A DNA stretch of 64,000 bases, from NCBI GenBank assembly GCA_965649765.1, contig OZ287750.1, positions 73,346,001-73,410,000 of the forward strand, given 5' to 3'. The DNA is from Bispira polyomma (taxonomy: Eukaryota). Positions 11,181 to 54,500 of the stretch are shown here, one piece after another (the first letter of the stretch is position 1; every line of letters begins with the position of its first letter). The position numbers and the translations under genes are program-made. The notes below the pieces were generated by a model, which worked only from the letters and a program-made list of their open reading frames with translations, was not told the origin of the DNA and ran no database searches.

Positions 11181-11254
11181 TTGATACAATAAGTTTTGCA
11201 AAGGAGTGTGATCTAAATACAAAGGATAGAAAAACAATTTGTGGAACACACTGT

Positions 11255-22191: not shown

Positions 22192-22408
22192 TTATAGCTT
22201 ATTGTCCGCCTCATTTACTGCGGGATTAGGAACGGTCCCGTTTTTCTCGGGGGGTTCTGCGGTCGACTTCATAGGGATAGCCGTTGTGGCAGTCGTCACT
22301 CGTGACGTCATACTTGTGACTCCCCCGGAAGTAGTGATGTAAGACTTGGACGGATCCTTGCCCTTCTTGTTACAAGTCAGACAGCGCAGGAATCCCATCC
22401 TAAACTGC
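22192..22408 (-). CDS. GPCR exon 9 (helix 8 and Ser/Thr-rich C-tail, stop TAA)
   Basis: TTTTCCAG acceptor; RQFRMGFLRCLTC (candidate palmitoylation Cys), then ORF 22192..22398. Confidence 0.92.
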
Positions 22409-25400
22409 CTGGAAAAGTGGATATCATGGATTAGTTATTAACAGAAAAATAATGCTGTTGGAAAAGTCATAACAATTAATATTCAAGGAACTATATTTGG
22501 GTTGTTTCCATGTGCACGGTAAACTGCGTTAGTGGTTCGTGGAAGGCAGAACAAACAAAAAAATACTAATGCTCAAATTTGTTCGTCTTCAGCTTGAAAA
22601 GTGACAGAAATTTGCATCTCATAAGGCCGGAAATAATATTGCAAATTGTTGTTTTTATTAGAAGAAAAATTACGAAGGATATGGCCATTTTAATAATCTA
22701 TAGATTAGTAATTCTTAAAAGTACCCATTTATTTGGCACATCTATCCATCCACTTAATGTCTTTTGGAATTGGGATTACCTAGGCGTAATGAGTGCTGTC
22801 AGATTTTGTTTATTTATTTGATTGTTTGATGAACTTTACCTACTTGTTTTCTTTATTTCAATTAAATTCTTCTGTGTAATATAACAGCACATTATGTGTA
22901 AATGATTTTCATAAAGAAAGCAAAGATAATCATGATGCTCTCAATAAATGTCAAAGACCTGGAAAATCCGATAATGAAATACTTTTTGGCCATAGTAATA
23001 TAACAGCATATTATATGTAAATGATTTTGGCAAGAGAAACCTTTAAAGTAATATTTAACCTTTTAGGATATATTCTACAATAGCGTACACAATATTTTGC
23101 CAGTATTTTTTCTCAAAAACTTTGGCTTCTGGCAACCACCACTTTGTTTCCCAAAATGCTTGTCAGTTTGACTAGGAATCGAATGTATAAAATGTAATAC
23201 ATTACACTTCCAAAAATACATTGCAGGAAGACAGAATATGAGAATGTACATCTAATTATGCTAGTACTTTCAAGTCAGCCAGTCTGTTTCAATGTGCGAT
23301 TGACCGCATCCTTGTTTTTGTAAAACTGTCTTACCTGGAGAGGAATCCGTACAGAATCGGGTTGAGTGCGCTATTGGCCAGAGACAGAAAGTTAAACCAG
23401 AGAGTGATGTCCCCGAGCTTAGCGATCATGGCCAGGTTGGTTTGGGCATGGTAGCTGGTCCTGTAAACCTGCATGGCGAGGTAGGGAGCCCAACAGACGA
23501 TGAAGACCACCAACACACTGATGAGGATACGGATCACCTAGCCGAGTGAATGATAATTACAGATGTAAAGATGGCTGAATATAGAAATATTCACTAAATT
23601 AATCTGAAAGTCCTAGATATGCCACTGGGGTTAAATACACATTAAATAACAATGATATATGTATATAAGAATCCACTTGACAGCATTCATGTGATCAGTG
23701 CGCCTTGCAACACTTTAAAAATAATACAAAGATTACAGTCAAAAATAAAAAGAAAAATATAGTCTAAAGGTTAAAAGATAGCTCAAAAAGGTATGTTTTC
23801 AGTTGTTTTTGAAAGCTATTTGTTGTCTGACTTTTATGTAGATGTGGTGGCAGTTGATTCTAGAGTTTCAGTGCAGCAACACTGTAAACGCAGTCTCCAG
23901 CTGGGATAAGCCTGGTCCTCCGAATATGTACTTTTGTACCAGTTTTGTTTCAAAAACATAAAAGATGGCTTTATTTTTAACTGAACTGAATAGCAAATTG
24001 GTAGCAAGTCCAATTCCATCAGAAGGTCTTTGGCAAAGTCCTTGGATCTAGGTAACACAAGCCTAGCAGCACAGTACTGGACACAAAGCAACTTATCTAG
24101 CAGCTACATACAAGTACCAATACGTATTCTATTGCAGTGATGAAGCCTGGATGTTATACATTTTTGTTGGGTCAGCACACAACAAAACCTGGTCATGTAG
24201 CAGACAGATACAGAACTAAAAAATTACTAATGTATTATGCAAATATAACTTAATATGTGAAGTCCTAAAAAAGCCACCATGGTCAAGTAAATATTGTAGC
24301 TAAATACATATGATATGGATATCATTGTAAATACTGCAGTTTATATAAATATAACTCTGATGGAGAACAAAAAAAAATTAAGTTGCTTTTTCGCGTTCAG
24401 TTATAGAGACTATTTACAAGTCAGTGTTAGTAGCTATCGTTAAACAACTGTACAAGTTTTTATACCTGTTGTGCCTGTGAAAAATGAAACTTAAACAAAA
24501 ATAAATTAACGAAAAAACAATAAAATGATTTTACAAATTCCTATTTTCGTTGCTTGATATTTAAAGTTAATGGATTTTTCTTCAATGTTATCAGGGTCTC
24601 TTTCTAAATTTAATATGGAGTCTAGCAGGTGACAATTTGTGACAGGTGATGATGGCATATCGGCGATGGAGAGAAAATGGAATAGTGACAGCCACACCTA
24701 TGTGAATTTAAAAGGTAGGACATTATATAAATACTGTGATGGACTCAAATAGCAGTGCCTTAAAGAAATCATGCTATTCATATGCTAGTTTTCCATATTA
24801 AAATATATACACAAATGACATTGACTAATAATTCTAGGTTAAAGTCATTAATAAATATCCCTAACAAGATCTGCTTTCTGACAAAATTTATTACTCTTCT
24901 AATTGAAGGCTTACTAGATTCTGTGTTTACCCTGAAATAAAGACAAGGACACTTCTGCCACAACCTTCCTGTTCTAGAACTAAACATTGCAATTAGTAAG
25001 GGCATAGTATTTGGGTTATATATTGTTAATTTATGAGGTTACATGTGTGGGACTACAAAAAATGCACAGAAACTTCTTATGGACATTGCATATGTTTTAA
25101 CAATCAAATGTTTGGTTTTAATTTAAAATTTGTTGAAAATTTAGAAATTCAATGGCTGTATTCATTAAAAACCACATCTTTGTGTTATTGAAAATGCTTT
25201 AATGTGGTAGAAAATAAAGATTTCAGGTGTATATTTTTAGCATCAAAAGCCAGGAGTTTTGGGAATTGTGTAATTAATTGTTACTTTCAAAAGATCTACA
25301 TGTGTTTGACAATAGTTCTTGGGACGTCATGAAAAATTGCTTTTAAAATGACAAGAAATAAAAGTGTGGGTGCATTAGTTTGGTACATTTGTGACATTTT

Positions 25401-28400
25401 ACATTTATTTCAGTCAGAAACTATACTTAGAGAATTCATAGATGACCAACTAAATTGTCCTAGATATTGAATTCAAAATTTAAATATGACACATCCATAT
25501 AAATAACCCTGCCCAGTTACTGGAAACCCAAAGGCATAAAAGTGTAAAGATTTGTGACTTCTTTTCATTTATGCCACATATTTATATTTTGCTCCAGATA
25601 TGTAACTCACTCTTTCACCAATGTTCTTGCTCCATATTTGCCTATAATAAATAAAAATATTCCAAAATTTTGCTTAATTATAAACCACTTTTGTGAAATT
25701 TTGTCAAAATCAGACAGCCTAAAATGTGTGCAAGGTTGGATGGTTATGCAAACATTCATTAAAAGAGCAGAGAGGTCAATAGGTTATATCGTTCATTATT
25801 TACACAATGACATTATGATTAATGAAAGCACTATAATTAACTAATACAGTTAGGCTGATGTTTTAACTATGATAATTCCTTTCTACATTAGACTAGATTA
25901 ATCATTATCAATATGTACATTCATTATTACATAGAAAGTCTACATAAGTCATGGTGTTTTTAATATGGAATAACTATGATAAGATGAAATGTCTTTAATG
26001 AAAAATCATCTTAGCACAATCATTATTTTTGAATATTAAAAAGAGTACCATATAAAGTTAACAATAAAATACAGTTTAAGAAAAAAAAAATAGAAATTTT
26101 TAATGCCTCTGTTTAAGCAAACTCAGGAATAGTGTATGCTCTTTGTTTTTAAGAGTGTTTTTTTCTGTACACATTTAAAGGGATATTTTGCTATTTTTGC
26201 TCTTAAAGGTGAGTCAATGTTAATGTTAAAGGTGAGTCAATGTTACAGATTTCAATTGTTTTGAGAAGGAAAATAAACAAATAATATTTAAAGTTCCTTT
26301 TTCGCGTTTAGGTTTTAGAGACTATTTACAAGTCAAGTATTAGTAGCTATCTATTAACAACTCTAAAATTTGGTGTACCTTTTTGGTCTTTTTCCTGTTT
26401 TCCTTTGCCTTCAAAGAATGTTAACATACATCATTGATAACTCAATACAAACCCATCAAGCATAGATTATTATCAAGCATCAAACTACTTGTTGCATTTA
26501 TGATAGTCATTTTTAGAATAATTTTCATTTTGTTTTACAAATTTAAATTACATCACATCGAGTGAAACCGGGTGTATTACAAATAATATCAAATCGAAAT
26601 CTTCTGAATTATTAAATTATGAATATTAAATACACAAATCAGTCACTTTAGGCAGCTATAAATAAATTAACCAATTATCTTATGCAGCTAATAATTTTGT
26701 TATGGAACGGTCAAGTTGTTTATAAACTGCAAGTTTCAATTTTACTAAACCTTTGTCAATTCATTGTAAATTTTCTGTAAAAATAATAAATAATGGTACA
26801 CCTATGTATATTCTTGTATGTATACAGTCTACCTGGCTACTAAGATACAGTCGTCCCAAATGCAGCATGTCTAGCATATTGATAATATTTTATATGTAAC
26901 TACTATTCCCTTTCTTAGACAATAAGAATCTCACCTGAACACGTCCAGACGAGTCTGATGTTTTCTCATCCTTTTTCCCATCTGCAGAACTAAAAGATGT
27001 AAAACAAGAGTTTCTTTTTAAAAAGACACAGAAGCACAGTGTGAAATACACTAACATTGTTATGGCCACTGTAGAAGATAAAGTCCGAGAGTGTGTACCT
27101 TGTTGTCAATTTTACTTTATTACGACGAAATGCGCCCTGGCGGCTTTTGTTTTCGATGCACACTTCCAAGTCTTTGTAATATATACTCAGTTAAGTGGGA
27201 TCTAATAACTATAAATCTGACACCCCCTCAGTTTGGACGGATCGATTGATTCCAACCAATCAATGAAGGCCTTTCATCTTATTTCTAATCTTACAGCGTC
27301 CTTTTCAGAATAAAAACAACATCAGGCTGTAGCTGATAAAAATTGTTTCCAGAAAAACAAAAGCATTCTATTGAGAAAAATCCCGTTCAAAGTAGAAGGA
27401 CACTGAGTAGCAACATAACTAAGTATCAAATAGTGGAAAAGTCCCCAATGTACCCTTCTACCAAGATTAGTTTCAACATTTAAGTGATTATTGCTTGGTT
27501 GGTGTCTCATTCCTTCACGATAATTTCAAATAATTTGGTTCATTTAGTTTTAATGAAATCCTTGTGGCAAAGAATCAAACCCACAGGACAACAGGCATAA
27601 CGATAACATACTTGGTGAAGGTAATTATGGAGTAAATTGTCACACAATTGATCAATGCTACATGTACTGTTCCAGTATTAAGACTAGTCGGGAAGATTGT
27701 ATTATCTTACTCACTCGAAAGACATTTTTGACAAAAAGGATGGGAAAATTTGCAAAAATTTGAATGAAAAATTTAAAAGATGAGTTGGGATGGACCAAAA
27801 GATAAGTCTCAACTTTAAAAGGATAAGTCGTGACCTCATAAAGATAAGTCTTAACCTCATAAAGATAAGTCTGCCAGCCCTCCCCAGTGGCGACCCCTAC
27901 TGCTGTTTGAGGTGAAATTGAAAATTACAGTTTTTCCTGCACTTTAGGTCCTTGGAATGGCCAAAAGATAAGTCTTAACCTTAAAAAAATAAATCATAAC
28001 TTCATAAAGATAAGTCTTAACCTTATAAAGATAAGTCTGCCAGTCATCAGAGCAAAATATAGGTCCTTGGAAGGTTATGATTGACCCCGAGTGACCATGA
28101 TGTATCGGCCGATTGGCCCCCACTCAAACATGTTTGAAAACCATGAGTCTCCCGAGTCAATAAGATAGCTCGTTAGAACCTCAAGGACCTCGCCGATAAT
28201 GGCCCAATCGCATAATCGGAATAGTCAGGAGCTATGATCGCCATAATGGAACATAGGTAATACAGACAACAGAAGTAATTATTGATGCCTTTTATAAATA
28301 AAGCTTATTTACTTGACAGGTGCTGAAATATATATACTTGACATTCTTAACACCGACAAATATAATGCACACCAATGAAGTGTATGTTAAATGTTTTAAA

Positions 28401-30518
28401 CCCTAAAAATATGAAATTACAGTGTCCAAACCAATTTACCCTCCTGTGTCATACATTTTTTTCTAATGTATTTGGGTCTCATGTTGCTTTCAACATCTTT
28501 GGTCACATTGTCAGGGGCATATTTATTGATGAAGGAAACCAGTCCTATTTTCACTGGAAACCACAGACCAAATGGCATGTACCTGGTAAAGTTTCCCACC
28601 TAAACGAAGCAATAGAAGTTAAAAACCACTGTCCTTCACTGCTTTAACAAAAATGACCAACGACCAACACAATATAACCACATATATTGAAAGTGGCATA
28701 AATACCGATATAAATCAATGTACATTTCCTATACATCCCCTGCCAACACTTACAGCATAAACTGCTCCATTTGAACCTCCCTCTAAAAGACCATATTCTA
28801 TATCGAGAAGCTTTCATAGTCTTTCCTGAGATGGTTCTTCTATATAGTTTTTTTTTTTTTGTAAACATGTACATTCCTTACATATCCTTGCTGTATCTAC
28901 TGTTATTTCTGAACCTTGTTTAAAAGACTACCTTTCTATATTAAAACCCTTTCTAAATCTTCCTCTGGACGGTCGGTCCTTGACCTACAGGCACCACTGT
29001 AAACTCTAAATTTCATACATATCCCGCTGACTACTCCCTGCTTCACATGCTGCTGTTTAGAAAGTATAGTTCGTAAACTTGAATTGTTGGATAATAAATT
29101 TGGGATAAGGGAAGTGTAGTTCATAAAATTGATTTTTTTTAGAGAATAAATTTTGAATAAGGAAATCGTAGTTGATAAAATTGAATTTTTAGATAATAAA
29201 TTTAGAATAACGGAAATATAGTTTATAAAATTGAATTTTTGGATAATCTAAGTTCAGATAAGAGAGGTTTTTTGTGGTTACTGTATACTGTAAACTCTAC
29301 ATCCTCTGTGTCCTCCACACACCACTCACTGTTTCATCTGCTGTTGTTTTTGGACACTCTTCCAGAGGGTGATGGAAGTTCTGATGTAAGCAAAACCCAT
29401 CAGGAGGGAGGGGATGAGGAATATCGCCACAAAGATATAGACGTAAAAAGCCCTCTTCTTGGCCAAGTCATAACCAGCCACTGTGCAGATAGTCCCCTGC
29501 TGTATTTCCTGAAAACAGAAACAGATTCATTAAATCAAATTGCAGCCTTGTAGTTGTATTCTCCAAAACATTTGAAGCTCAGCTCAACCTCAGCCTTAAA
29601 TATATGGTAAACTGGCTACCAGACTTTGCTAACAGGTTCCGGTGAGGTATCATCCGACAACATTTTTACAAACAATAAAAAACATATTGTCTATGTATAC
29701 ATAATCAAATCTGTGTCAATTACATCCATGGTCGAGTCAATCCAATCACAACATACATTACAAAATAAAAATTACTCTCTTTTTTTGGTCGGATCGGATG
29801 CGGAGGGGAAGTGGAATCAAAGCTATCAAAACACTTACTCATTGACATAAGATGTATACAATGACGGGCCAGTGGATTGCTTCTAATTTCCTCTATTATC
29901 ACTATTATTACCATGGGCTTTCCTCGTGGCAATCAAACACTTCCCCAATATGTTATACAGTAAAATGACTAATTATTTTTTTAAGTTTATTTTAAGGAAT
30001 ATTGAGAGCCAGTATCAGATGCAATGTAAAATCAACAGCTACCTATGTGTTTGTAAGATGCCAATATTAATGGCTTACCAATTCAAAAGATGCCAGGTAT
30101 CAATAATGCACGTTAAAGAATCCATACTACAATATACTGTTGCTTTTCAATGGTCAATGGGGCTTTGATTGGGGGGGGGGGGGGGGTAGTTAGGGACAGA
30201 ACCATTTAAGAACATTATTACACCTTCATCAATTCTAATGTTCAACTTACTAAGATGCCTGGCATCAATATGGCACAATACAAATCCACAATACAGTACA
30301 TTATATGGTACATTGGTATTAATTGATACTCACGGCCAAGAAATATGTGGGCAAAGAGAGTGCAATGCCAAGTAGCCAGACACCTGCAATAATGATGGCA
30401 GTTCTCTTGAAGGAGCTCATCCCCTGGGCCTTCATAGGGTGATTGATGACCATGTACCTGTACAGGAGAAACAGAAGAGTATGTCATGGATAGGTAACAC
30501 ATCCAAGGCTAAACCATT

Positions 30519-30586
<68 letters not shown>

Positions 30587-33500
30587 GTCAGTTAATTTTA
30601 TCATCTTAAACTTCTTTACATCTATACTGCATAAATATCTCGGCTCATATCTCACCCCTTGCTCTCAGCAAATCAATACCCGTCGTGGTAATCCTAACAA
30701 ATTATTTCTAAATGTTCCTACTTTTGATGCCAGCATAGACAGCTCAAAAGTCCATTTCGATCGTAGTTTCTCATACGCTGCACCCAAGTTATGGAATGAC
30801 ATACCACAAGATATTAGATGCTTGCCTTCTATTTCGACTTTTAGAAGCAAGCTTAAGTCCCATCTCTATCAAAAAGCCTACCCCGATTTTTTGCGCCTCA
30901 GGAGCCGCTAGTACTGAGTTTAAGCGCCATTGTAGAATTGATTAGATTAGATTATACTAGCAAGCATTAGATAATACACTATTGTTAGGGTGAGAGGGTG
31001 TTACTTTGAACAGGCAATGTCAATGTGGCAAGATCATTTATTTTATAACATTTTAAAGTTTTTAAAAGCTGGATTCAGAGCTTTCTTCATAGCAGCTCCC
31101 ATGTTATGAGAAGAGTCTACCCGTTGAGCTAAGATCACTAAAAACACTTTCTATTTTAGCAAAATCCTGAAAACCAATCTCTTCAACATTGCTTATCCTT
31201 CTTAATATCCTCTAGTACACCACAACATCCTCTCTTATGGGCTTGCTATGTTTATGGACTACACGGTTGGTTAACTGATCCTGTTGGTATGCTTTAGAAG
31301 ATGCCTAGCATCAATAAAGTGCATTAAATATGCATAATGATAAAGGATAAAGTTCCATCCGCATACATCAAAAGTCAATATTAACCGGGCTACACAGATG
31401 CATAGAAATATAGAAGGAGATCAAACATTTGATGTGCACGGAAACAGGTTTAATGATACAACTTGTACACTTATTAACAATTTAGCTATATATACCCTAC
31501 TCACCGCTCTAGACTCATAGACATCAGGGTGAAAGCGGACCACATGAAGGAGGCGAAGTAGAGCCAGAGGACGATCTTACAGCCTATCAATTTCAGCTCC
31601 CAAATCATGTAGATAGATTCTACAGCCTGTAACATAGATGTACAACAACAATATGTCAACTATAACAAGAATACACACCAACTTCATCTTAAAGCATGCC
31701 ACATTGTGATCGATGGATTATATGACTTACAACACGATGGCACTAAGTAGAAAGCATGCCACATTGTAATGCTTCCAGCTTTGGATATAATTTAGCAATA
31801 CAAAGGTATGCGTTCCAGCATACTTTTAATGGTTTGGTCTTTGCCCCTATGCCCTAGCCCTCCACAAAGCTTGGCTCAGTGTTTTGTTTCTGTAATCCTG
31901 CAAACAGACAAAGCCAGAGCAAAATCATACAGGTCAAGCTCCCGCTTCCATGCAAGTAAGATTATATGGCCTGTGACATGAATACAGAACATCCAGATGT
32001 TTTAGCTCTTTTCCCCCAATATTAAAGCCAGATTGTGATCACACAGACCATTTCTCAAAGCTCCCACCCTGTGTAGATAAAAGCAAGAAGCAATGGCCAA
32101 CATGTGCTTAACATCATTTCGACGATCCCATAGATATAGTTGTCAAAGATGTATAACAAATGAACTCTTGAGTTCTTTTGACCATGTCTTAGTTCATTTG
32201 GGTTCAAATCCTTTGAAATATTGTTTAAACCTTTTAGGGACCAGGGTTCAAACCCTTTGAAATATTGTTTAAAACTTTTTGGGGAGCAGGATTCAAGCCC
32301 TTTAACTACTCTTTAAAATTTTTTGTGGGTTAAAGTTCTTTAACTACTCTTTGAACGAGAGTTCAAGGCCTTTAAGTATTGTTTAAAACATGTTACGGAT
32401 TAGGGTTCAAGCCCTTTATAAAAGGTCACATTTTTCCATGTTCCAGACAGTTGAATATTTTTCCAAAAGAGCAATCTTTACAATCGGGGTGTCACCTCAG
32501 TTAATCTTAACATTTGGTGAAGCCATCCCAGTTGATCTTAACAATAGGGGAAGCCACCCAGATTTACAACAATGAGGATTCCATTTTGTTGTTTTAGGGG
32601 GAATAAGGGGTAAATACACCCGGATCGACCGGGGTGGCATTAGGATTACTCTGGACTACTCCAGTTTATACGGGCCCAGAGGGGGGTAAAATCTCCAATC
32701 GGCCCATTTTCTAAACATGTTCAGAAACTTCACAATCCCGTTACTTGATCCCCGGATCACCAGGATTATGACACTAAATGTCCAGATCAATCCTGGAGCT
32801 ACAGGATTACGTCCGGGGGTACACAAAATCAGGGCTGGTCCTGATCTATCTTGACAGTGGAACAGCCACAAGTTTCTTTGTTGGGCCAGTAAGTGTTTTG
32901 TTCTGATGGGATTTTTGGTATTTTTTAACAAAAGGTCAGATAAATGTTCTTGTAACATTTGGTGGCCCTGAAAAAGGCCAATATATATTATGTCATTCTC
33001 TGAACATTGGCAGCTCTGCAGCTGCTGGAAGAGGAGGAGGACGATTTTAGAGAGATGGAAAGCTGGTGGAGGTGCGTCTGCTAGAGGTCTTGGGCAGTGT
33101 GTCGGATGTGGTGGTTGCTCCAGCTGTCGTGGTCGGTTAGCGGTCATCACTCTCCTCTGTTATTGGCTGCATATCCAGGTTTGGGTAGTCTCCTCCTGGG
33201 TTGTCTACAAGGTACAAAGACAAGGAGGTCTGGTTGTGAATGTCTGTATTCACTGATGGGATGTTGGAGATATGGAAGGGGCTGGCCGCACTCTTCTGTG
33301 GTGAAGGTATATGTATAATTGTCCCAGTCGGTGTCCGTCCCAACACCGCTATCTGCCTGGGCTGCTGCTTCTGGAAAGGGCTTTTGTCGCTGTGCATGTC
33401 GATTGGTAATACTGCGCTGGTGGTCCATGCTAATACTGCTGCGGTTGTGGTGGTCCCTGCTGGTACTATTGCTGCTGCTCTTGCTGCTGGGATGTGCGCA

Positions 33501-36500
33501 TCTAGTCTATTGGTACACAGGCCTGTACAGTTGTTGGGTTGGCAATGGTGGCTTCCATTGCTGTCGCCAATTCTGGGATGGTGGTGGTGGCATGTCATAT
33601 GAGGTGGAAGCAGAAGGTGCCTAAATCTGCTGCTGCTGATGCTGGGTTGTTAAGGTTGACAATAGCTGGAAGGTCATGGTCTGGAATTCCATAAAAAGAG
33701 TGTCTGGTAAAGTGTCAGCCTGGGCCTTGACCCAATCAAAGTAGGCCACCCTCATCCCTGATGTTTCTGGCTTCGAAGCTGCTGGCTTACCCTTGAAGTT
33801 TGACTTCGTCACGAAATGTCGGATGATGTGCGGCTTCATAAAGGTGAAATGTTCATTCACCCAGGTCTGTCTCTCAGTCAACTCGGATCGGGCCTGCCCA
33901 GATTTCAAAATACTGAGTGTGCCAAACATTGTCCTATGCAACTGAAACCATCGTTTCAACTACTCCGCATCCCTGCCCATCCTAGCCAAGATATCTGCCC
34001 AGCAAGCCTTTTTCTTGACATTGCCTTGTAGTCCTTCTGCTTTTTGTTAAAAAGCAACTCGTGTTCTCTAAGCCAGTCAACCAGGGAATCCTCCTACAGT
34101 ACTGTCAGGGCGACACTCTTGGTTTTCCCCCCTCTTCTACTTCCTGCTGGGTGACACCTTGCCCCCGGACTTGTCTCTGTCAGATTCGGAATTGGGTACT
34201 CCCTTTCTTCTTCTTCTTCCCTCCCCACCCTCCCTGTTGATTGTGTTTCCTGTTCCTCCTCTTCCCCCCCCTCCGCCTGAAGTGTAACTCCCACATGAAA
34301 CACTGCCTCCTCAGCAGCTGAGGCCATCCTCCTCTTCTTGCCTTTTCCTTTGCTCCCATTGGGTGACATTTTCAAATTTTTCAAAAATATTTTTCTTAAG
34401 TCATAAAAAAACAACAACAAAGTCATAAAAATCTATCCATCTATAAATTTGGGTAATATCTGTAATATCGGTGAAAAAATGCCAGCACTGGTGTAGACTC
34501 ATGGAAGTGTGAAGATCGAATGAGGTAGAAGTGGGCAGCTGTCCACTATTTATACCATTTATACCACTCAACATAACCACCCCGATTGTTAGGATTACTC
34601 GAGGCCCAAACAAGCTAATCCTCATTGACCCTGGTTAATCTTTACAATGGCAGTGGATCAATCGGGGTGTCACAATGATTAAACGAGAAGCCACCCAAAT
34701 TGCCCAGAGTCAATGAGGATTGCATTTTGGTGTTTTTAGGAGACGGGAAATACACCCCGATTACTCGAAGTATCAACAACATTAACCGGGGTGGCATTAG
34801 GAATATTTGGGGTTACTCCCCATTTACCAAGCGCAGAGGGTGGAAAATATCTAGGGCCATTTTCTGAACATGTTTAGAAACTTCACGGTCGCTTTATTTG
34901 CTTTCCGCATCACATGGATTACGGCCCGGACTATCCGGATCAACCCTGGATCATCATAATTTTTCAGGATAGGTACAGGATTACGTCTGAGGTGCCCAAA
35001 ATCGGGGGTGCTCCCGATCTATCTTGACAGTGAAACAGGCCATAGATCGAGTACTCTGTTGCTGAAACAGCAGTGTTTTATTGATGTGCGACTGTTACCT
35101 ATACCTATGTAAGCTATATAAATGTTTCAATTATTATTATTATTACCGATAGGTAGGATACCATGCATTAGCAAAGCTTCAAAAATCTGACAACACACCT
35201 ATAACAAAAAAAATATCATTTCCCTAATAAGTCTGTGGTTGTATATTGATTCATTCAATAGGCGTACACAATATTATAACTTATGGTCAACCTACCCAAG
35301 TGCTTGATTAATTACATATCATTATTTAAAAATATTGCCGTAAATTCGGTGTCAGATTTGTTTGAGTTATGGTAATGTCCCTCCTTGTGCGTATTGTTAA
35401 TAAATCAAAGCATCGGGACAGAAACTGGCCCTAGGTTCCTGCTATACTGTCTTGTTCATATAGACCTTGCAACACATTGGTAATATGTCGAATACATTGC
35501 AGAATGTTTAGTTATCTACAGTAAAAATACCTAAAGAGAAAATTAAGGACGGCCCAAGTTTTTGCCCAGTGAGTGTAGATGTGCGAACGAGTCTGCCACG
35601 TGACTATATATGACGTCATAACACATCCTGTACCAGCCCGTTGACGATTTGTTTTGTAATCTGACCTCACATATTGTTATTACAAGGGCTTGAGTGTCAC
35701 ACAAACTTTCAACTTGTCTGACATGGGGACAAAATCTGGCCTAAATAATATACCTTGGTATTTGTTTTCACTGTACAAAAAAATAGGTGTATTGTACACA
35801 GAACTATATTTAGTGTAGAGTTGATATCTAAGAGTGGCTTCAATTGTAGTACAGAATTATATGAGTATTTTAAGAAGATAAAGTTAAACGAGGTTCTTTC
35901 AACATTTGGCTAGATAGGCAATATACTAGTATTTACTGGTATAAATATAACATATTTGTGACCATTTTTTAAATACATGTGAGAATCTGAAATAACTAAA
36001 TGTTCATTAGTTTCCTTAAAATGTAGTTCTGTGAAAGTACATGTATCCTTGGTAATAATTTTAATGTTTTTGATACTGTCAGTGTAACATATTTCACTTA
36101 AAGGGTCAACGTATATGTGTATGGTTTAGCATTGAAGTTCGTGATGGGACAGATTTCATATCATGTGTTAAATTTTAGATAATAGTGTTTGTACATTTTA
36201 CTAATTTTAGAGAGAATTAAACTAAAAGCCTTAGTATCAAAAATACCTAGAGCGGCACTCAGTAAAGCGCATATCTCCACCGTGCTAAAAATGTTAAACA
36301 TATAATTGATAGATCTGCCATTCTGCACACAAGGTCTACTCTAAAATGTAAGGTATTTTTCATTTCACCCATGCCCCATTCATCCACTATATGTCATGTA
36401 AATTAGTTCAGTAGTTTTTGTGTTCAATTATTCTTGTGACAAACAATTACATAAACCAACTAACGAACATAGGTTATAATATAGCTTTCTCGCTTAAAGT

Positions 36501-39500
36501 AAATTTTTTTTTTTTTTTTAATTTAATTTTTGATATCTAACGTCTACTCTAGTACCTGTTTAGGTTATATTGGGACGGGTAGTTGGAAATGCTGGAAGAA
36601 ACACTGCATACAGTTGATCAAGGTTCTGCACTGAAACCAGCGGCCCACAGTAAGAAACTACCACCTTTCACACATCGATGGGATTTGAACTCACGCCGCC
36701 CAGAGGTGAGAGACCAGTGATTGTGAAGTGCAATGCTTGCTAACCACTAGGCCACCGCGGCCCCCCGCTGAACGAACTAACGAACATAGGTTATAATATA
36801 GCTTTCTCGCTTAAAGTAAATTTTTTTTTTTTTTTTATTTAATTTTTGATATCTAACGTCTACTCTAGTACCTGTTTAGGTTATATTGGGACGGGTAGTT
36901 GGAAATGCTGGAAGAAACACTGCATACAGTTGATCAAGGTTCTGCACTGAAACCAGCGGCCCACAGTAAGAAACTACCACCTTTCACACATCGATGGGAT
37001 TCGAACTCACGCCGCCCAGAGGTGAGAGACCAGTGATTGTGAAGTGCAATGCTTGCTAACCACTAGGCCACCGCGGCCCCCCGCTGAAGGTAATAACAAT
37101 ATCTTTACAAAGTACATGTATCAGTTTTACCACTACAACAAAAAACAGAAATTACACTAATAGATGATCAATAAAGTATTGCCGGTAGGTAGAAAGTTAT
37201 TTATGGTTATAACTTACACACCTACAATGTAAATTAACCTGTCCACACCCTCTCCCCCCTCCCCCTTTTTTTTTTGCAGACACAAGATTGGTTGCTATTT
37301 GTTTCCCAGCAAGGATTTAATTAGATAATTACACACCTGGGGTGAAACAGATCTGTGTTACTATCATGTAATTATCAACTTTGCCTTGAAATTTAAATAT
37401 ATAATGAATTAGAAACACTTAAAAGGTCTAAATTTACCTTGCAGGTTGGTATCCAATGTGTAGCCATTTTAACCATCCATATTTATTGAAAAGCTTTAGC
37501 AAGAAGAAAATCATCAGATTTACCTCAATCAAGGAGTTTCTGTTTCTAGTCTGTGTATGTCGGTTTGTTTGTCACCTGAATGACACAAAAAATCGTAATT
37601 TTGGTGGATGGATAGGGGTTGCAGAACAAAACCCAATGGATTTTAAACAGTTCGAAAGATCTTATGCCTTTTACTTGGGGTACAGCAGCATTGACACCAT
37701 TATAAAAAGTAAGATTAATCTCTCAAAAATCGTTACGATCCACTAAGCATTGAATTCTATATTTATACTACTTCGCTTTTTATATCGTCTGATTCCTGTT
37801 TAAATTTATACTGATTAAACTCATTCTATTCAAAGTGCCAATTCACCCTTTTCTTGACTGTCAAAGTATAGCTAACCATCACCAGTTACTGTCTTTCCCC
37901 TCTAACTGAAGACAGAAACTTGGGGATGACCATTTCTATGAATGTCACCAAGGTTTCTTAACAAGCCACTAAGAATAGGACCCAGTGACATAGGACTGCT
38001 AGTTTAAGTGGTTCTCCAAGCCACTATGTATCACTAACAATAGGACCCAATAACATAGGGCTGCTAGTTTAAGTGGTTCTCCAAGCCACTATGTATCACT
38101 AACAATAGGACCAAATGACATAGGACTGTTAGTTTAAGTGGTTCTCCAAGCCACTGTGTATCAGTGACAATAGGACCCAATGACATAGGACAGCTAGTTT
38201 AAGTGGTTCTTCAAGCCACGATGCATCACTAAGAATAGGACCCAATAACATAGGGCTGCTAGTTTAAGTGGTTCGCCAAGCCATTATGTATCACTAGCAA
38301 TAGGACCCAATGACATAGGGCTGCTAGTATAAGTGGTTCTCCAAGCCATTATGTATCAGTAACAATAGCACCCAATGACATAGGACTGCTAGTTTAAGTG
38401 GTTCTCCAAGCCATTATGTATCACTAACAATAGGGCCCAATGATATAGGACAGCTAGTTTAAGTGATTCTTCAAGCCACTGTGTATGAGTAACAATAGCA
38501 CCCAATGACATAGGACAGCTAGTTTAAGTGGTTCTCCAAGCCACTATGTATCAGGAACAATAGCACCCAATGACATAGGACTGCTAGTTTAAGTGGTTCT
38601 CCAAGCCAGTATGTATGTGCCTCTACCTGGTCGTCCCTGACTGAGATCAAACCCAGGTCCTCTATATTCCTAAGCGAGTGTGTTGCTCATTTGACCAATA
38701 TGATCAATGCAACATATTATAGGTTCTTTACCCAGAGACTATGGACACAAGGCCACCCTTTTAAGATGATCTCCCGAGCGATAATGTATCTTCGAACGAC
38801 AACAATTTACCTATAGCAGTTCTATGTATGAAGATGCCACTTTATGGCTGCTCTACTTTCCCACTTATGTGATCACTGATCTGTAATATATTCTTATAAA
38901 ATCTCAATCTAGTGTTGTAAATGTACTTTAATTATGTACACCTTATATTTTAATGTATTCATATATTTTTTTCTTTATGCTATGTATACCCATATATACT
39001 TTATTTACACCGAGTTTGAAAAATACTTTAAATAAATAAGCAACACTTGTGTCATTTGATGACAACACACATTTACGAAGGATTATGGTGTTATTGATTT
39101 TTTGTTGTCTTGTTTTACAATTTATGGCAACCCCCTAGAGAATGTGAAACTTTAATGACTATTCTGACACACTGTATACCTCTCTTTTTATCTAGATTAA
39201 CTTGATTTGGAGGACTTATTTGTATGAAAGTTTGACAGCAGATATAGATATCTATATGGGTGTTCGTGACAAGGCCTAGTTAAATCTTTTTATAGCTATT
39301 TGGTGTGTCTTTTCTCTTCTAAATCTGTTATAAGTCGAGGGAAAGAAAAGGCAAGATTACTCACAGAAAAGTCTTGCAAATAGATGATGGAGTTGTCTTC
39401 CTATATATATTAATCATAGATTTTGTTGGAAATTGTTGGAGCTGTTGGAACTTATTTTGAAGTAGTTATAATGGTGCTGGGAAGAAGTTTGTAAATTAAA

Positions 39501-42500: not shown

Positions 42501-45500
42501 TGCCTGGGTCACATATGGAAGACGGTGCTGCAATTGGGACGATGAATGTTGAAAAATTTTGATTCTTGATCATTCTTCGTGAACATGGCAGGAAATTAAT
42601 TTTTTGTTATTAGGTCGGCGACTATCCACCAATACATTACTATCCCAGAGCCAACTACACCACAGGGGGATGAATGACATGTTTTGAGGGATAGGGAATT
42701 TCGATGGATGTGGAATGGGGAAGAAAGGCAAAAACGCAGCAGGAATTGGCTACCAAACTGGAGGAATTTCCAGGTTCACCGACATCCACTTTCTAAACTT
42801 TTAACATTGTGGGCTAGACATTTGAGAATCATGTCATGTATTTATGTATATATATTGGTTACAGCTTTCGCCGAATTATGGTTAGTTGGTTCTGAATATT
42901 TTATTAATATTACATTTATGAAGAATATACTTCAAATACTTAATTTGAATTTGAATAGTATTTAATATTGGTAATAATTAAAATAAACCATATTGCAATG
43001 GCTGGAAAAGGCATTCACATTTCATAGAACGTTTACATCATGTAGAATCATATATTGAATAGGTTATATAACATGGTTAACACTTTAATTTTACAGATAT
43101 CACCCCTTGTTACATATATCTCCTCCATTATGGGTTTAAATCTCACATATGTGGGAGAGTAGGAAGTAGACTTGCTGAAGGTCAGTGGTTTACAGAGCAG
43201 AAAACTTTGACCTATCCTGATTTCCTCCAGCACTGAACTACTGGTCATGATATGGCACAAGACATTTTAAAAACGATGTGAATCCAAAATAAACCACGAA
43301 ACTGAGAGTATACATTTTTGTGAATAAACAGAGCTTTTGTATATACATATCAGTATTACCACACACCTTTATAGGTACATATCAGTATTACCACATACCT
43401 TTGTATGTACATATCAGTATTACTACATACCTTTATAGGTACATATCAGTATTACTACATACCTTTATAGGTACATATCAGTATTACCACATACCTTTGT
43501 GTGTACACAAATCAGTATTACCACATACCTTTGTATATAAACAGAGATGAGTATTACCACATACCTTTATAGGTACACATATCAGTATTACCACATACCT
43601 TTGTAGGTACACAGATCAGTATTACCAAGAGGTCAGCCACTGCTAAGTTACAGATGTAGATGTTGGTTACTGTCGTCCTACCCATAAACTTAGTCACTGT
43701 CACAATGACTAAGATATTTCCTGAAAATATATATTAAAAAAATACATGCTAGGAGAGGTAAAAGTTTTATTGTCATGGCTGGCTGTATATTTAAACATTT
43801 TTGGGATAGAATGGAATATGTAACAAAGCTATAATTTACAGCTTTGTAAGCATAACAAGCATCTCAATATAGAAATGCAGAGGTAGACAAGGAGTTTAAG
43901 CATGCAAATATGTGAGATACAGGTTCATCTGAACAAGTGACTGTTATGTTACTCTATTTTGACCATCTATTATTTTTCAGGTCATATGTATGTTCTTTAC
44001 CACACAAAACATCAATACTGACTAACACGAAAATCCCCCCCCCCCCAAGCACTCACCAAGCAATATATTAATTGTGACTTGAATCCCCTTCCCCAAACGC
44101 TTACCAAACAGCCTCACCAAGAAAATCACACCGTACACCACCCCTCAGGTGTTCTCTCCCACTCTCACTTAACAATTACCTCCACCAAGAAGATTACACC
44201 ATACACCACCTCTTTGACAATCAGGTGTTCTCTCTCATTCTTACTTACTAATTACCTCCACCAAGAAGATTACACCACACACCACCTCTTTGACAATCAG
44301 GTGTTCTCTCTCATTCTTACTTACTAATTACCTCCACCAAGAAGATCAACCACACACCACCTGTTTGACAATCAGGTGTTCTCTCTCATTCTTACTTACT
44401 AATTACCTCCACCAAGAAGATCAACCATACACCACCTCTTTGACAATCAAGTGTTTTTTTCTTTCACTCTTACTTACCAAACAACCCCACCAAGAAGATC
44501 ACACCATAAACCACCCCTTTGATAATCGTGTGCTCTTTCTCGCTCTTTCTCTTCTCATCTGCTCTCTGTTCGCTGTGTATCCTGTTCAGCTCATCTACGG
44601 TCTTGTTACAAATCCCATTACACACACAGATGTACTCCGTCCTCTCCATGTCCAGATCGCAGACATCGTAGATGATATCCAGACAGGCCAGCAGTCCGTT
44701 ATCTCCCCAGCCCTCCATGTTTTCACAGTCAAAATCTTCATTTGGATTTTTCACGGTGACGGAGGACTGTGTCGCGTCTTCATCCGGGCAATTATTCTGG
44801 CAGATGCAAGGGAACTCTTGCACGCCCATTCCACAGGTGAGAGTAACATGTCGGAAGCAAACGCGAGGATCTAGCAAGGACCACTCAGACGTGTCGGAAC
44901 AGTTTATAGGAGGGTCAGTAGGTGGAGCTAGTATACTGGGTGAGGTCATGACAACAGTGCTAGTGATGTTATGATCTTCAGTGTCCATTGATGTGACAGC
45001 TGAAATGGTCTGTTCATCAGGGTCTACTGTACTATGTAGGGCACCTGTATAACAGGAAGAATGAAAGATATTGTGTAAAGGTGGAAATTTTAGATGGAAG
45101 AAAATGCCACAATTTGTGAGAACTTTACTGGAATTAAGTTTCATTATTGGCTACGTTTTGATTAAATTATTAACATAAGTTCAAGTCTTTATTGGGAATT
45201 AATGTTCACTCTCTCAATGCATTAGCTAAACATCTCAATTACTTCCTGGTGAATATTTCCATTTACTTTCCAGTCAAAATTTCCATTTACTACCCAGTAA
45301 AATTTTTAATTACTTCCCAGTGAAAATTTCCAAATACTTCCTGGTGAAAATGTCTACAAGGACTGTATATCTGGAGAAACAGATATTTCTTAAGTTGTCA
45401 TATTAGCAGGTATACAATCTGAAAATTACAATGTTTTCTAATAGGAATGCATCTGTATTGTTACCTCCGCCAAGGAGATGACGTTTTTGTCTGTGTGTCT

Positions 45501-48500
45501 CTTGGTTTGGTTGGTTTGTTGTCAGGATTACATTGAAACCACTGAACAGATTGACATTAAATGATTTTAAATCTTTATTACTTTGGCATTTCACAAAACT
45601 TTTTAATTATTACAGCATGAAATTAGGTGATTGAAGAAGGATTCGTCATTTTTATTGTAGATTATGATAAAAGGGCGGTTGGGATTTTTGGTCACCATGA
45701 CGTCTTGGTACAGGTATGCTCTTCTGAGAGCCCTTCTAAAGTCCCAACTGTTATGGCTTACAGGATGAATTAGACATTGTATATCAGATCAACTAACTTA
45801 GTATAGATTAACTGGCCTTTTAATTGTTGTAATTGTATTTTGCATTTTTAACAAGCCTTATTGATGTGCTAAGATGCAACAACATAATGAATCAACCAAT
45901 CAAGAAGGCTGAAACACAAAGCCAGGTCATACATAATTAAGGATGTATGGATGTACTGGAGTAAGTAGGATAAGTGAGTTTGAAAAGATGAGTTTTAAGT
46001 TTTTTAAGTCTTCTAAACCCAGAAAGTGTTTGTAATTATCTAAGTTCAACTAAGAGACTATCAATTTATGAATATTTCATTTGTGTTATTTTTTCATAAA
46101 ACTAATAGCTAGCTCTTGCCTGTGGGTTTGACTGGGAAAAAGCCGACATAAGTAACACACACAGTATATGAGGTTCGCTATGACACGCGTCACAAAGAGG
46201 AAGTCTGAAATGGTGAATTCAGTCAAGAAGGATACCTTTATTTGCAAAAATGAAGTATAAGTTAAGAATATACCTTTAAAATAGCTAATCAGAAAATTCT
46301 ATGAAAGAGCCCTAAACGTTCCTACAGCAAAAACGTGTACCCTTAATTGTTTGTCACAAAGTACACATTAGATTTACCATGGAATTTACTAGCCAGCATA
46401 AATTTTTGTAATAAAAAGTGCCTCCATTGACACACCTGCACTTTTATTAGTGATTTTCAGTGCACCCAATAAAAGGACTGCAAATTTCATTTCGAAACAT
46501 TCAGCATGAAAAGCCATTGGAATACAGTGAGAACGACTTGTGTAAACTCAGCCATCGTCTATCAAGATTTTTTTATATTTTCCCTTGTTCATGCTTTTTT
46601 TTGTTTTCGGGTGGGTTTTGAACGAAGTGATATATGTCAAGTAATATAAGCTATAACTAAATTACATAGGATTTAATTTCGACAAAACACTTGCTAATGT
46701 ACAGGTTTTATGTTTTAATTTATATCTGTGGAGTGACAAGGGGAGTGATCAAAGTGGCAGATATCTGTGACAAGAGTCTGATATATAAATGTAGTGAGTC
46801 ATAATGCTTACAGTCACACCACGACGGTTGATTTTTCACAATAATCAATGTTAGTCCCGGTTAACCAGGGTAAAGGAACCGCGCTGTCAATCATTATCAA
46901 AATACCTCAGTCCATATCTCACCCCTTACTCTCAGTAAGTCAATACCTGTCCTGGTAATCCTGCGAATTATTTCTCAATGTTTCTACCTTTTGATCGCAG
47001 CACACACAGTTCAAAAGTCCATCATTTTAATTGTAGTTTCTCATTGGCTGCATCCAAGTTATGGAATGACCTACCATTAGATATTAGATGATCACCTTCT
47101 CTTTCAACTTTTAAAAGCCATCTCAAGACTCATCTCTATCAAAAAGCTTATCCATCCTGACACGGTCTTACTATTACCGACTCCCTCCCTGGAAACGACC
47201 CCTTTTCCATCCACCATAACATCATTACTGAATAACGATTCTGATTTTTTGTGCCTTAGAATCCACTAATTGTTATTACGGAATTGATTAGATTAGATAA
47301 GATTACCAATCTGCAGTTGAGCTAAGATAACTAGAAACACTTGTCAATTTTAGGAAAAAATTCCTTCTCTTGTATACCCCCTCATCTTTTCTTACGACCT
47401 GGATTGGTTTATGGCCAGCTTTTTCAATATACACAACAATAAAAAATTAATTAATGTTTGTCCTTGTTAATCAGGGCAAAGAAACACAACATGCAGGAAG
47501 TATCGAGGGCCAATCAAGTTATAAACTGACAATCATAACGGATCTACGATCTAGGTGGATGGGTATCAAGGGTAGAGTGATGGGGGACAGGGTTTACCAC
47601 TGACAATCATCACAGATCTACGCCCTAGGGGTATGGTTATCAAGGGTAGAGTGATGGGGGACAGGGTTTACCACTGACAATCATCACGGATCTACACCCT
47701 TGGGGGATGATTATCGAGGGTATAGTGATGGGAACAGTGTGTACCACTGACAATCATCATGGATCTACGCCCTTGGGGGATGGGTATCGAGGGTAGAGTG
47801 ATGGGAACAGAGTTTACCACCGAAAATCATCATGGATCTACGCCCTAGGGGGATGGGTCTCAAGGGTAAAGAGATGGGAACAGGGTTTACCACTGACAAT
47901 CAGGGTATTACATGAGTACCACAGAGGAATCAAATATTTAAACAACAGTGACAAAAGCATTTCATGGTTTACCATGGTGAGCGAGGACCAATCACATTGT
48001 CCTTGTTAACCAGGGCTAAGATTATGGTTAATCACGGATACAATTCAAAACCTATGGTTTTCGTTCACGGTTTTCTAAGGTCATTCAAGGAAGAATATTT
48101 AGTACTGTAGTCCAGGGTTTCAACACTGTAGGGTTTTTGAACGGTGAACCTTGCCCACTTTATATATTAACATAAAGCATTGACCGACAGGTGTTCTCTA
48201 ATTTCATCTAACGGCTCTTGTTTTTAATGTGAGAGTTGAGGTAAAACTGAACTTCTATAATATAAACAAGTCCTGGTTTGGGGACCAGTGTGAGGAAGAA
48301 ATAGTGTTTATTTACCAACGAGATAATCTGGTGTTGTGGGCTGAAAATTGCTAATTTCATATAAAGGGTCTCGTTTATACTGTTACTTAGGGTAAACCTA
48401 GATTTTTAAAAGTATAAATAAGTCCTGAATTGGTTAAGAACATGTGCGTACAATAATGTTTATTTACTGTACATCTGATATTGGGAGTACTAATTAACCC

Positions 48501-51500: not shown

Positions 51501-54500
51501 TTACATGAACAGAACTTGTGCGCAGTTTTACGGAGTGAGTATTCTTGATATTGCACGAGGGAAGTAAAATCTAACATTGTAAAAGTTAGTTATCCTGACA
51601 CATAAAAGAAGTAGTTCAACACAAAGACATGTAGGTGTTCTGTTTTAAAAATATATAATGTCACAGTATCGTGTCGTGTGACCCCTTTTCTTTTAGTGTA
51701 CTATAGCTATTGGTGTCACAACATTTTCTGATCCCTTACCCTTTGTGCATTGTGGATAATATTTCACACAGGTGTGACAGTCTTTTCAAACCGCCTTTCC
51801 TTTGTGTACCATAGCCATTGGTGTCACAACATTCTCTGATCCCTTACCCTTTGTGTGTTCTGGGTAATATTTTACATAGGTGTGACAGTCCTTTCAAACC
51901 CGCTTTGCTTTTTATACCACAGTTATTGGTGACACTACATTCCCTGATCCTTTACCATTTGAGTGTATTCTGGGTAAGATTTCACATAGGTATGACAGTC
52001 CTTTCAAATCCCTTTTCCTTTGTGTACTACAGCTATTGGTGACACTATATTCTCTGATCATTTACCCTTTGTTTGCATTGTGGGTACTATTTCACATAGG
52101 TGTGACAGTATTTTCTCACCCCTTTTCCTTTAGTGTTAATGTTTTACTTCTGTAGCATCAATCAATATGCGACAGCATAGTTCCATAAAAGGAAAGGTTC
52201 GTGATTAGAGGTCAATCTTAACCAGATGTGTTTTGAGATTTTTTTTATCAGCCTGCAATCCTTGTTTCAGTCCGAAGAGTGGCAGGGAGACTACATTCTA
52301 TTTAGCAGTTGCAGCAACTTTAAATGATGGAAGGTCTTAAAAATTAGGACATTTATTTTGAATTTTATACATTTGTCTAATGTAATCATCGCTCTACATA
52401 GGTCAAAAAGTATTTTCTAAACCGCTGCATTTTGTCTATTGTAATTAATATTTTAGATAGGTGCCAAAGTATTGCATAACCCCATGTCCTTTGGTGAAAC
52501 TGTAGAAATTGTTTCACAAAGGTGTTACAGTTTCGTATAGTCCCTTAAACCTTTGTCTACTGCACTTAAATTGTTTATGTGTTCCAGTATTTTCAAACTG
52601 CTTGCCTTCAAACACAGTAGTTATTGTTTTATATGGGTGTCACAGTGTTACCTTACCCCCATTCACCTTGTGTAATGTAATCAATGTTTTACAAACATAT
52701 AACATTAGCCCCGATGCCCATGCCCTTTGTGTTCTTTATACATTAGCTTACATACTTATCCCACGTGGGCTGATCCCCTACCCAATCCGTACTGTAATCA
52801 TTCCTTTTCTATCTGTATTTGTGTTTAAAAAAAAAAAATTAAAACATCGGTGAGATTTCAATTTAAAATTTTAAGATTCAAATAGATTTTCCAGAAAAAG
52901 TCTTAATTTTGTCTTAAATCTTATATTTTGTCTCAAGTCTTGGATTTTACCTAACAGACTTAAGACAAAATTTTTGCTAAGCTAAAACTGGTATTTAGAA
53001 AGGTCTTAGTCAAAATTTAGACTTAAGTTTTGTCTTAACATTAAGGCCTCTAGGAAGTAGTTGAAAGTTTTGGAAAAAGTCCTAAATATGTATTAATTGA
53101 CAATTTAAATAAATTATCAAATAAATAGTACTTCCTTTTTGTATATTCACACTGTTTGATATGAAAATATAATTTAAATTTTATAAAACAGTTTAGCCCC
53201 AAAAGTAATGTTACACCTCTTTTGTTCCCATTCAATGGGTTCCCTGATCTAATTATTATTATTATGAATTTTTAACGTGCTTTATTGATGCTAGGCATCT
53301 TCTAAAGCACAACAGCAGAATCATTAATCCAATTGTAAAGTTAATAGGGAATAGCAAAGTCGTAAGAAAAGAGATGGGAGCATGTACGAGGTAAGCTAAG
53401 GTGGGAAGGCATGGTTAAAAAGATAAGTTTTAAGCTTTTTCCTAAAAGGGATGAGTGTATCAACTGATCTGAGATCAACTGGGAGCTTGTTCCACAACAA
53501 AAGAGCCGCATTGGAGAATGCTCTGGATCCTGCTTTCCTGATGGGTCCGACCGAAGAAAAAGAGGGTCTGTTGCCTCTCTTACAGTTACTGAAGGAGAAA
53601 AGGGAAGCAAGGTAGGAGGGCTGTTGAGTGACTACAGCCTTGAAAGTGGTGACGTGAATCTTGAACAAAATACGAGAGTGAATGGGCAGCTAGTGTAATT
53701 TTTTGAGGTAAGGAGTGACATCTGTGCGACAACCCAGGCGAAAATAACCCTAAACAGGTAGTTTTTGAGGGACTGGAGCTTTTTGATCTACGACTTGTTT
53801 ACTCCGAACAGAAGAGAGTTGCAGAAGTCGAGGCAGCTGCTAACTAGCGCGTTAGCCACCGTTATCGCTGTGTCCATTGACAGGTGTTTTGATCTAAGCA
53901 GAAATTTATTCTAAGACTTGAGACCTTTTGTGAATCATACCCAGTTTTACTAATAGTGCTACTAAGTGGTGCATTTTGTATGGAGTCATATGACATGACA
54001 TAGATTTAAGCTAGACAAAAGCTAAGTGACATTCAAAAAGATATAATCGAGTTACATTACAAACTTTAGTGATAAGACTTTAATTTAAAGTTTTTTAAAA
54101 TTTCAATAGACTTTACCAATATATAATTATTTGTGTGTAGGGTGTGTCACAGGCATTCCTAACCCCTGACATTAACTGCATGTATTACAGTTATTGGTTG
54201 GTAGCTTGTATGACAAGCTAATGACAGGTGACTTCCTAGAAATTAGGTTCACCTATTTAAATCAAAAGTATCAACACACTAAAGCAACATCCACTCATTA
54301 TTGTAAGTAAAACATTTGAGTGTAAATGATAAACTTTATATATATATGTGTGTACTGAAATAACTAAATCAGTAAAACAATATTAGAAATTTGTTTACCA
54401 GTTATCCAAATGCAGATAGCCAAAACTTAACAAATACTTTGAATGCTTTGAGAAAACAAATTCAAACAGAAGGAGATTCGTGGCTGATATTCACAAAGAT

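What the first reader, a model, noticed from the sequence alone, without database searches (positions are those of the whole stretch)
43340..44547. Two consecutive exons each spawn a tandem array whose unit ends at about +6 of the intron
Seen: after exon 2 the unit is the last ~70 exon nt + GTAAGT. After exon 3 the unit is the last ~28 exon nt + GTATGT. The two arrays are unrelated in sequence and length, yet both breakpoints fall at intron position +5/+6. Known: +1 to +6 is the U1/U6-pairing part of the 5' splice site, and tandem duplication around splice sites is a proposed route to intron gain and sliding. Inference: either a splicing-coupled mutational process (R-loop, or RNA-templated repair at U1-bound donors) generates exon-end repeats, or selection retains only duplications that keep a full donor on the first copy. 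Selection alone would also allow longer intron overhangs, so the shared +6 endpoint deserves a genome-wide test.
Basis: partly seen in the sequence, partly recalled or inferred. Interest (0 to 1): 0.8.

Follow-up and report, generated by a model that had tools for sequence, protein, structure and literature searches.

The report
Splice-donor "mirage" repeats in GPCR gene
Two neighbouring exon ends of a receptor gene were each copied head-to-tail, with their splice donor, into the next intron; this kind of repeat is known ("mirage") and common at donors in this genome, but the shared stop at intron base +5/+6 is not a general rule.

Summary
A minus-strand rhodopsin-family GPCR gene has two donor-spanning arrays: about 70 exon nt + GTAAGT (6 copies) and 29 exon nt + GTATG(T) (8-9 copies). 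Both end at about +5/+6. A tandem paralogue keeps both introns and has no arrays. The class is known: "mirages" in amphioxus, and the human F7, CBS and 6-16 VNTRs.

Genome-wide, triple donor motifs outnumber reversed controls 3.7-6-fold; acceptor motifs (0.9-1.2) and a GT-less look-alike (0.6) do not. Donor enrichment is therefore supported.

The +6 rule is not. In 42 other donor arrays the smallest intron overhang runs from 2 to 111 nt (median 16.5). Only 3 fall at +5 to +7 (2.5-3.6 expected if flat) and 32 need +8 or more. A skew to short overhangs is significant under one null only.

Best reading: microhomology-type duplications arise often around exon ends, and donor-spanning ones survive because the first donor is the true one. 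The cause of the hot spot is open. Reads and an unbiased exon sample were unavailable. The scan already reported this class on other DNA of this genome.

The parts
44478..45044 (-).
   Evidence: paralogue frame matches at E 1.6e-9; no Pfam match for this exon alone
44099..44547 (-). Array A: last ~70 exon nt + GTAAGT, six copies including the real exon end; copies 2-4 have -1 G changed to A, copy 5 lost the GT, copy 6 ends at GTAAGC
   Evidence: TRF period 76, 5.2 copies; unit split and boundaries
43599..43720 (-).
   Evidence: Pfam 7tm_1 E 1.6e-9; paralogue 85% identical in protein
43328..43627 (-). Array B: last 29 exon nt + GTATG(T), eight GT-bearing copies and a ninth exon-part copy; copies 2-7 keep a donor identical to the real one
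   Evidence: TRF period 32, 8.5 copies
31505..31626 (-). Exon C (TM3, ends in ER), no array at either edge; its acceptor closes the ~12 kb intron that holds array B
30334..30457 (-). Exon D (TM4), no array
   Evidence: tblastn E 0.002
29330..29508 (-). Exon E (TM5), no exon-derived array; at least one further exon before exon F was not located (phase mismatch)
23335..23537 (-). Exon F (TM6-TM7), no array
   Evidence: class A GPCR chains of the PDB, best E 7e-7
22192..22408 (-). Exon G (helix 8, C-terminal tail, stop codon); coordinates approximate

Best explanation
Both arrays are donor-spanning 'mirage' minisatellites, tolerated by-products of mutation. Step 1 (inferred): slippage or gap repair, often across 1-4 nt of microhomology, duplicated a stretch running from inside the exon to a few bases into the intron. 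Step 2 (shown by the divergence pattern, mechanism inferred): unequal exchange amplified and homogenised the inner copies. Step 3 (inferred from human F7 data and from the reading frames here): the first donor is still the true one and is used, so the array is harmless intron sequence and decays; duplications inside an exon or across an acceptor are removed more often. The genome-wide excess at donors (shown as motif counts) needs a raised duplication or expansion rate around exons, with selection leaving mainly the donor-spanning class. The intronic breakpoint is not fixed: two neighbours at +5/+6 come from the short end of a broad distribution.
For: The paralogue has the same introns without arrays. 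In array A the inner copies are 88-97% alike while the end copies are 68-80% alike to them, the turnover pattern described for mirages in PMC3087553. Downstream donors give stops or frameshifts and some have decayed. Overhangs of 42 arrays span 2-111 nt, median 16.5. Left and right ends agree within 4 nt in 17 of 34 arrays against 8 expected, as for simple tandem duplication. Four arrays share AAGT between the exon and the donor at the junction. Donor triples are 3.7x and 6.0x their controls, 4.1x after correcting for single-motif frequency; acceptors 1.2x and 0.87x; the GT-less look-alike 0.56x. Exon ends are 46% GC against 35% for intron flanks. First-donor use is reported for human F7, LMNB2 and PDGF (PMC1557585).
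Against: The cause of the raised rate was not tested. Acceptor arrays are not clearly depleted (0.87-1.2x) and some exist (L044, L053, L091), so the selection filter is inferred. Overhangs are skewed short under the stricter null (15 of 42 at 10 nt or less, 6.1 expected, P 0.0005), though not under a null that allows microhomology (10.7 expected, P 0.08). No RNA reads were available to show which donor is used. Motif counts are matches, not arrays, and long arrays weigh heavily.
Confidence: 0.55

Rival explanations
1. A donor-specific mutational hot spot coupled to splicing or transcription (polymerase pausing, R-loop or break near the exon 3' end) starts the duplications, without fixing the breakpoint at +6.
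For: The enrichment needs the GT (vs 49) and is absent at acceptor motifs. Units are somewhat exon-heavy (mean overhang fraction 0.35-0.44).
Against: The same pattern follows from an exon-centred rate increase plus selection. Nothing here measures breaks or R-loops. Breakpoints up to 111 nt into the intron fit a sharply placed lesion poorly.
Confidence: 0.25
2. One reading: U1/U6 pairing at +1 to +6 sets the breakpoint, by RNA-templated repair or a bound snRNP, so units end at about +6. Possibly true only for a minority class.
For: Both window arrays end at +5/+6. 10 of 42 other arrays have a minimum overhang of 7 or less and so do not exclude +6, against 2.5-7.1 expected.
Against: Only 3 of 42 fall at +5 to +7 (2.5-3.6 expected, P 0.45-0.71). 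32 of 42 need +8 or more. Right-hand ends give 3 of 34 at +5 to +7 against 2.7 expected. Human F7 is -4/+33 (PMC1557585).
Confidence: 0.08
3. No hot spot: this genome is rich in minisatellites, arrays start anywhere, and selection merely spares donor-spanning ones.
For: Eleven other arrays lie in the 64 kb window. The flat null that allows microhomology is not rejected (KS P 0.24).
Against: Selection that only spares cannot lift donors above neutral background, yet donor triples are 4-6x their controls while single GGTAAGT is rarer than its reverse (132,630 vs 149,634).
Confidence: 0.08
4. The arrays are functional: decoy donors that tune expression through nonsense-mediated decay, recursive AG|GT sites, or intermediates of intron gain.
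For: Six copies in array B keep a donor identical to the real one, with AG before GT. Human CBS and 6-16 use downstream copies (PMC1557585). Intron gain from mirages is proposed in PMC3087553.
Against: The paralogue lacks both arrays. Donor copies decay (A copies 2-5, B copy 8). All downstream donors break the frame. B units show no clear pyrimidine tract before the AG by eye.
Confidence: 0.03
5. Assembly artefact.
For: Raw reads could not be checked.
Against: Copies differ by up to 32% in a graded way and carry indels; dozens of unrelated loci show the same anatomy.
Confidence: 0.01

Closest known systems
'Mirage' minisatellites of amphioxus (Adh3, globins BflGb6 and BflGb9, troponin C, PGBD5; PMC3087553, PMC3902484)
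   Same: Tandem copies of an exon-intron boundary running into the intron; units of tens of bases; many but not all copies keep the splice signal; inner copies homogenised and end copies left out; several per gene; mechanism of origin unknown.
   Different: Found here outside cephalochordates (earlier scan notes call the animal an annelid; not tested by me). Here there is a measured donor excess with no acceptor excess, whereas amphioxus reports both edges without counts. Polymorphism and normal splicing are shown in amphioxus but untested here.
Human donor-spanning VNTRs: F7 IVS7 (37 bp), CBS IVS13, interferon-inducible 6-16, LMNB2 (100 bp), PDGF intron 4 (81 bp) (PMC1557585)
   Same: The first unit spans the exon-intron junction, so identical pseudo-donors follow the true donor.
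   Different: A handful of human loci against probably hundreds or more here. F7 is 4 exon + 33 intron nt, the reverse of the exon-heavy units in this window.
Intron gain by tandem genomic duplication (Rogers model, as cited in PMC3087553; case title PMC4974935)
   Same: Tandem duplication of a stretch holding AG|GT (array B).
   Different: That model concerns a duplication of an AG/GT proto-splice site inside an exon (my own knowledge of it). Here an existing donor is copied into an existing intron, and no new intron or exon results.

Membership tests
mirage / donor-spanning minisatellite | Head-to-tail repeat whose first unit spans a real exon-intron boundary | tested here: met
   introns conserved in the paralogue
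mirage / donor-spanning minisatellite | Further copies lie in the intron and repeat the splice signal, some decayed | tested here: met
mirage / donor-spanning minisatellite | Unit length in the minisatellite range (10-160 bp in amphioxus) | tested here: met
   32-36 and 67-78 nt; range from PMC3087553
mirage / donor-spanning minisatellite | Concerted evolution of inner copies, end copies excluded | tested here: met
   Array A inner copies 88-97% alike, end copies 68-80%; less clear in array B
mirage / donor-spanning minisatellite | Normal splicing at the authentic site | not testable with these tools
mirage / donor-spanning minisatellite | Copy-number polymorphism or instability | not testable with these tools
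   one assembly, no reads
   3 of 42, expected 2.5-3.6; right ends 3 of 34, expected 2.7
   3.7x and 6.0x against 1.2x, 0.87x and 0.56x; match counts, no confidence interval
Intron gain or sliding by tandem duplication | A new in-frame intron or exon, or a shifted intron position | tested here: not met
   positions identical to the paralogue; downstream donors break the frame
Rhodopsin-family GPCR (PF00001) | Seven transmembrane segments with family motifs | tested here: met
   tested exon by exon; the joined protein was not searched

The most novel reading that the evidence does not exclude
In this animal, spliced donors are a mutational hot spot: a process tied to splicing or to transcription of the exon 3' end creates tandem duplications there several times more often than elsewhere, perhaps with a minority class that ends within the U1-paired bases. 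This would be a route by which RNA processing shapes DNA mutation, testable on hundreds of loci.
Probability: 0.3. Interest if true: 0.75.

Novelty: new member of a known kind. Interest (0 to 1): 0.33.

Why it matters
The two arrays themselves are ordinary mirages and probably harmless. The literature calls the origin of mirages unclear and rests on a few genes; a genome with many of them makes the origin testable. The arrays also matter in practice, because rows of pseudo-donors can mislead gene prediction and give a natural test of first-donor choice.

Tried and rejected
(3) The 65-bp array at 37967-38616 first looked like a 'RYIVAW' exon copy; the frame closes at once and the real TM3/TM4 junction lies at 31505/30457, so I rejected this. 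(4) A sharp +6 peak: rejected. (5) The short-overhang skew was P 0.0004 in the first 35 arrays, 0.03 under a microhomology null and 0.08 under that null after adding 10 arrays and dropping 3 without a clear exon; I report it as unsettled. (6) Arrays left out for no clear exon or ambiguous orientation: L012, L018, L070, L073 plus strand, L080, L081, the second L082 array, L083 plus strand, L087, L091 minus strand. (7) The two large protein searches were not needed. The spliced gene model was searched exon by exon by reference; the joined protein was left out, so the receptor subfamily is not assigned. (8) A second findings look-up on breakpoints returned nothing. No contig looked human.

Full report
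Setting. The window is G000:C3:73346001-73410000 of a 1.035 Gb eukaryotic assembly. The finding lies in a minus-strand class A GPCR gene. Seven coding exons were located: A 45044-44478, B 43720-43599, C 31626-31505, D 30457-30334, E 29508-29330, F 23537-23335 and G from about 22408. Exon B matches 7tm_1 at E 1.6e-9 and exon F matches solved class A receptors. At least one exon between E and F was not found. The model was searched exon by exon; the joined protein was left out.

Observation. TRF finds arrays at 44145-44541 (period 76) and 43345-43627 (period 32). Array A has six copies counting the real exon end. Its left boundary is +3 to +6 and its last copy stops matching after GTAAGC, so +5/+6 fits both ends. 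Array B is 29 exon nt + GTATG, with +6 reachable through a shared T; a ninth partial copy is followed by a hexamer matching the donor at 4 of 6 positions. A tandem paralogue about 9 kb before the window start, 85% identical in exon B, has both introns at the same codons and no arrays, so the arrays most likely arose after the gene duplication. In array A the inner copies are 88-97% alike and the end copies 68-80%. Three copies lost the -1 G and one lost the GT. In array B six later copies keep a donor identical to the real one. Use of any later donor gives a stop or a frameshift. The other four located donors and all located acceptors carry no array.

Is it more than background? In the window, 0.76% of bases lie in the first unit of another array; two of six donors would then be hit with P about 8e-4 (post hoc). 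Genome-wide pattern counts, each against the same pattern read backwards: GGTAAGT three times at 25-55 nt spacing, 3310 vs 905; AGGTATGT, 1681 vs 278; acceptor-like TTTCAGG, 736 vs 614; TTTTCAG, 837 vs 959; the GT-less look-alike AGGAAAGT, 78 vs 139. Single GGTAAGT is rarer than its reverse (132,630 vs 149,634), so the corrected donor excess is 4.1-fold. These are matches, not arrays: one array has 139 copies and some dispersed families recur, so the ratios are rough. The direction is the same in all five patterns.

Testing the +6 claim. I collected loci with two or three GGTAAGT copies, most of them anchored to an upstream acceptor, and measured where the first copy starts in the exon and where the last copy ends. 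Fourteen upstream exons were supported by Pfam matches (SLC35F, subtilase, LLGL, two ankyrin, USP47, EGF, 7tm_1, COR-B, ASK-PH, Sec63, OCRL-ASH, NOA36, P450; E 1e-17 to 0.007). The others rest on an open frame, most with an acceptor. The final set is 42 arrays, excluding the two in the window. The minimum intron overhang is 2-111 nt, median 16.5. Three arrays fall at +5 to +7, against 2.5-3.6 under flat nulls (P 0.45-0.71); the 95% interval for that share is 1.5-19%. Ten have a minimum of 7 or less and so do not exclude +6; 32 need +8 or more. Among the 14 Pfam-supported exons the values are 2, 2, 4, 7, 8, 11, 13, 15, 17, 19, 24, 24, 31, 39. Right-hand ends show no peak either (3 of 34, 2.7 expected), and agree with left ends within 4 nt in 17 of 34 (8 expected), which supports both the measurement and a simple tandem-duplication origin. 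Short overhangs are in excess under a null starting at +6 (15 of 42 at 10 or less, 6.1 expected, P 0.0005) but not under one that allows microhomology (10.7 expected, P 0.08). Four arrays start at an exonic AAGT that matches the donor's own AAGT. With the empirical frequencies, two given arrays both at 7 or less has probability about 0.06, and both at +5 to +7 about 0.005; with the many multi-array genes this genome seems to hold, some such pairs are expected. Limits: the sample is small; it required GTAAGT in a second copy, so true overhangs under 6 are mostly invisible; periods were mostly 23-53 nt; divergence can inflate a left boundary; curation was by hand.

How it most likely works. Shown: the arrays are tandem copies of exon end plus donor, absent from the paralogue, homogenised inside, decaying, unproductive if used, and enriched at donor motifs with no fixed breakpoint. 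Inferred: a first duplication by slippage or gap repair at short microhomology, then growth by unequal exchange. The upstream donor stays authentic and is preferred, as shown for human F7 (PMC1557585), so donor-spanning events are tolerated. Copies across an acceptor lie upstream of the true site and should compete with it (my inference). Tolerance alone cannot raise donors above background, so a raised rate near exons is needed. Exon ends are 46% GC against 35% in flanks, and units lean to the exon side, which fits an exon-centred rate increase filtered by selection (0.55). A donor-specific, splicing-coupled hot spot with loose breakpoints fits as well and is not separated by these data (0.25). 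A U1-defined +6 end is refuted as a rule (0.08 as a minority class).

Comparison with what is known. [quoted passage not shown] Human examples include F7 (4 exon + 33 intron nt), CBS, 6-16, LMNB2 and PDGF (PMC1557585). The structural criteria are met here; splicing and polymorphism could not be tested. My paper searches found no genome-wide donor-versus-acceptor count or breakpoint survey for this class, but the library lacks most subscription journals. Earlier notes of this scan describe the same class at other loci of this genome and gave me the name. One of them says most copies stop within a few bases of the donor; in my sample 15 of 42 do so within 10 nt.

Verdict. Real, a new member of a known kind, probably neutral. 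What remains open and testable is why donors carry several-fold more arrays than background. Interest 0.33.

Noticed in passing
L002 (G000:C3:73335210-73338329): Tandem paralogue of the GPCR about 9 kb before the window start, same strand, same two intron positions, no arrays; a natural pre-duplication control.
   Followed up: partly
window 37967-38616: 65-bp array, 10 copies, inside the 12 kb intron after exon B; preceded on the minus strand by a tRNA/SINE-like stretch; not exon-derived.
   Followed up: partly
window about 10200-14450, minus strand: Broken frames that read by eye like a DIRS-type retrotransposon (gag-like, reverse transcriptase, RNase H, tyrosine recombinase). Not scanned.
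   Followed up: no
window 7192-8791, plus strand: Two overlapping frames that read like a LINE reverse transcriptase fragment. Not scanned.
   Followed up: no
window 44479-45042, minus strand: The receptor's 188-aa N-terminal exon encodes a Cys-rich ectodomain with no Pfam match; its second half is 35% identical to the paralogue.
   Followed up: partly
window 23538-29329: Phase mismatch between exons E and F implies at least one unlocated exon (third intracellular loop).
   Followed up: no
L044:2935-3069, L091:1821-1999, L053:659-875: Candidate acceptor-spanning duplications (2-3 copies), one before a kinase exon: acceptor mirages seem to exist here too.
   Followed up: partly
L040, L043, L045, L076, L090: Several 3-kb loci hold two donor arrays at neighbouring exons (SLC35F-like, subtilase, LLGL-like and others), so consecutive hits as in this window are not rare; arrays may cluster by gene or region.
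   Followed up: partly
L047, L049, L062, L065: The unit starts at an exonic AAGT that matches the donor's AAGT, a 4-nt microhomology at the duplication junction.
   Followed up: partly
L058, L060, L061, L068: One dispersed element family carries paired donor-like heptamers and matched the donor pattern at four places on C1; it inflates motif counts and was not used as an array.
   Followed up: no
L069:1604-2384, L077:48-935: Nested duplications: a longer exon-sized repeat plus a short donor array, and a 95-bp donor array after a DSL-like exon with a nearby shorter derivative array.
   Followed up: no
window 36454-37088, 47525-47902, 51681-52136: Other tandem repeats (316 bp x2 at 99%, 73 bp x5.2, 110 bp x4.2) with no link to a located exon.
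   Followed up: no
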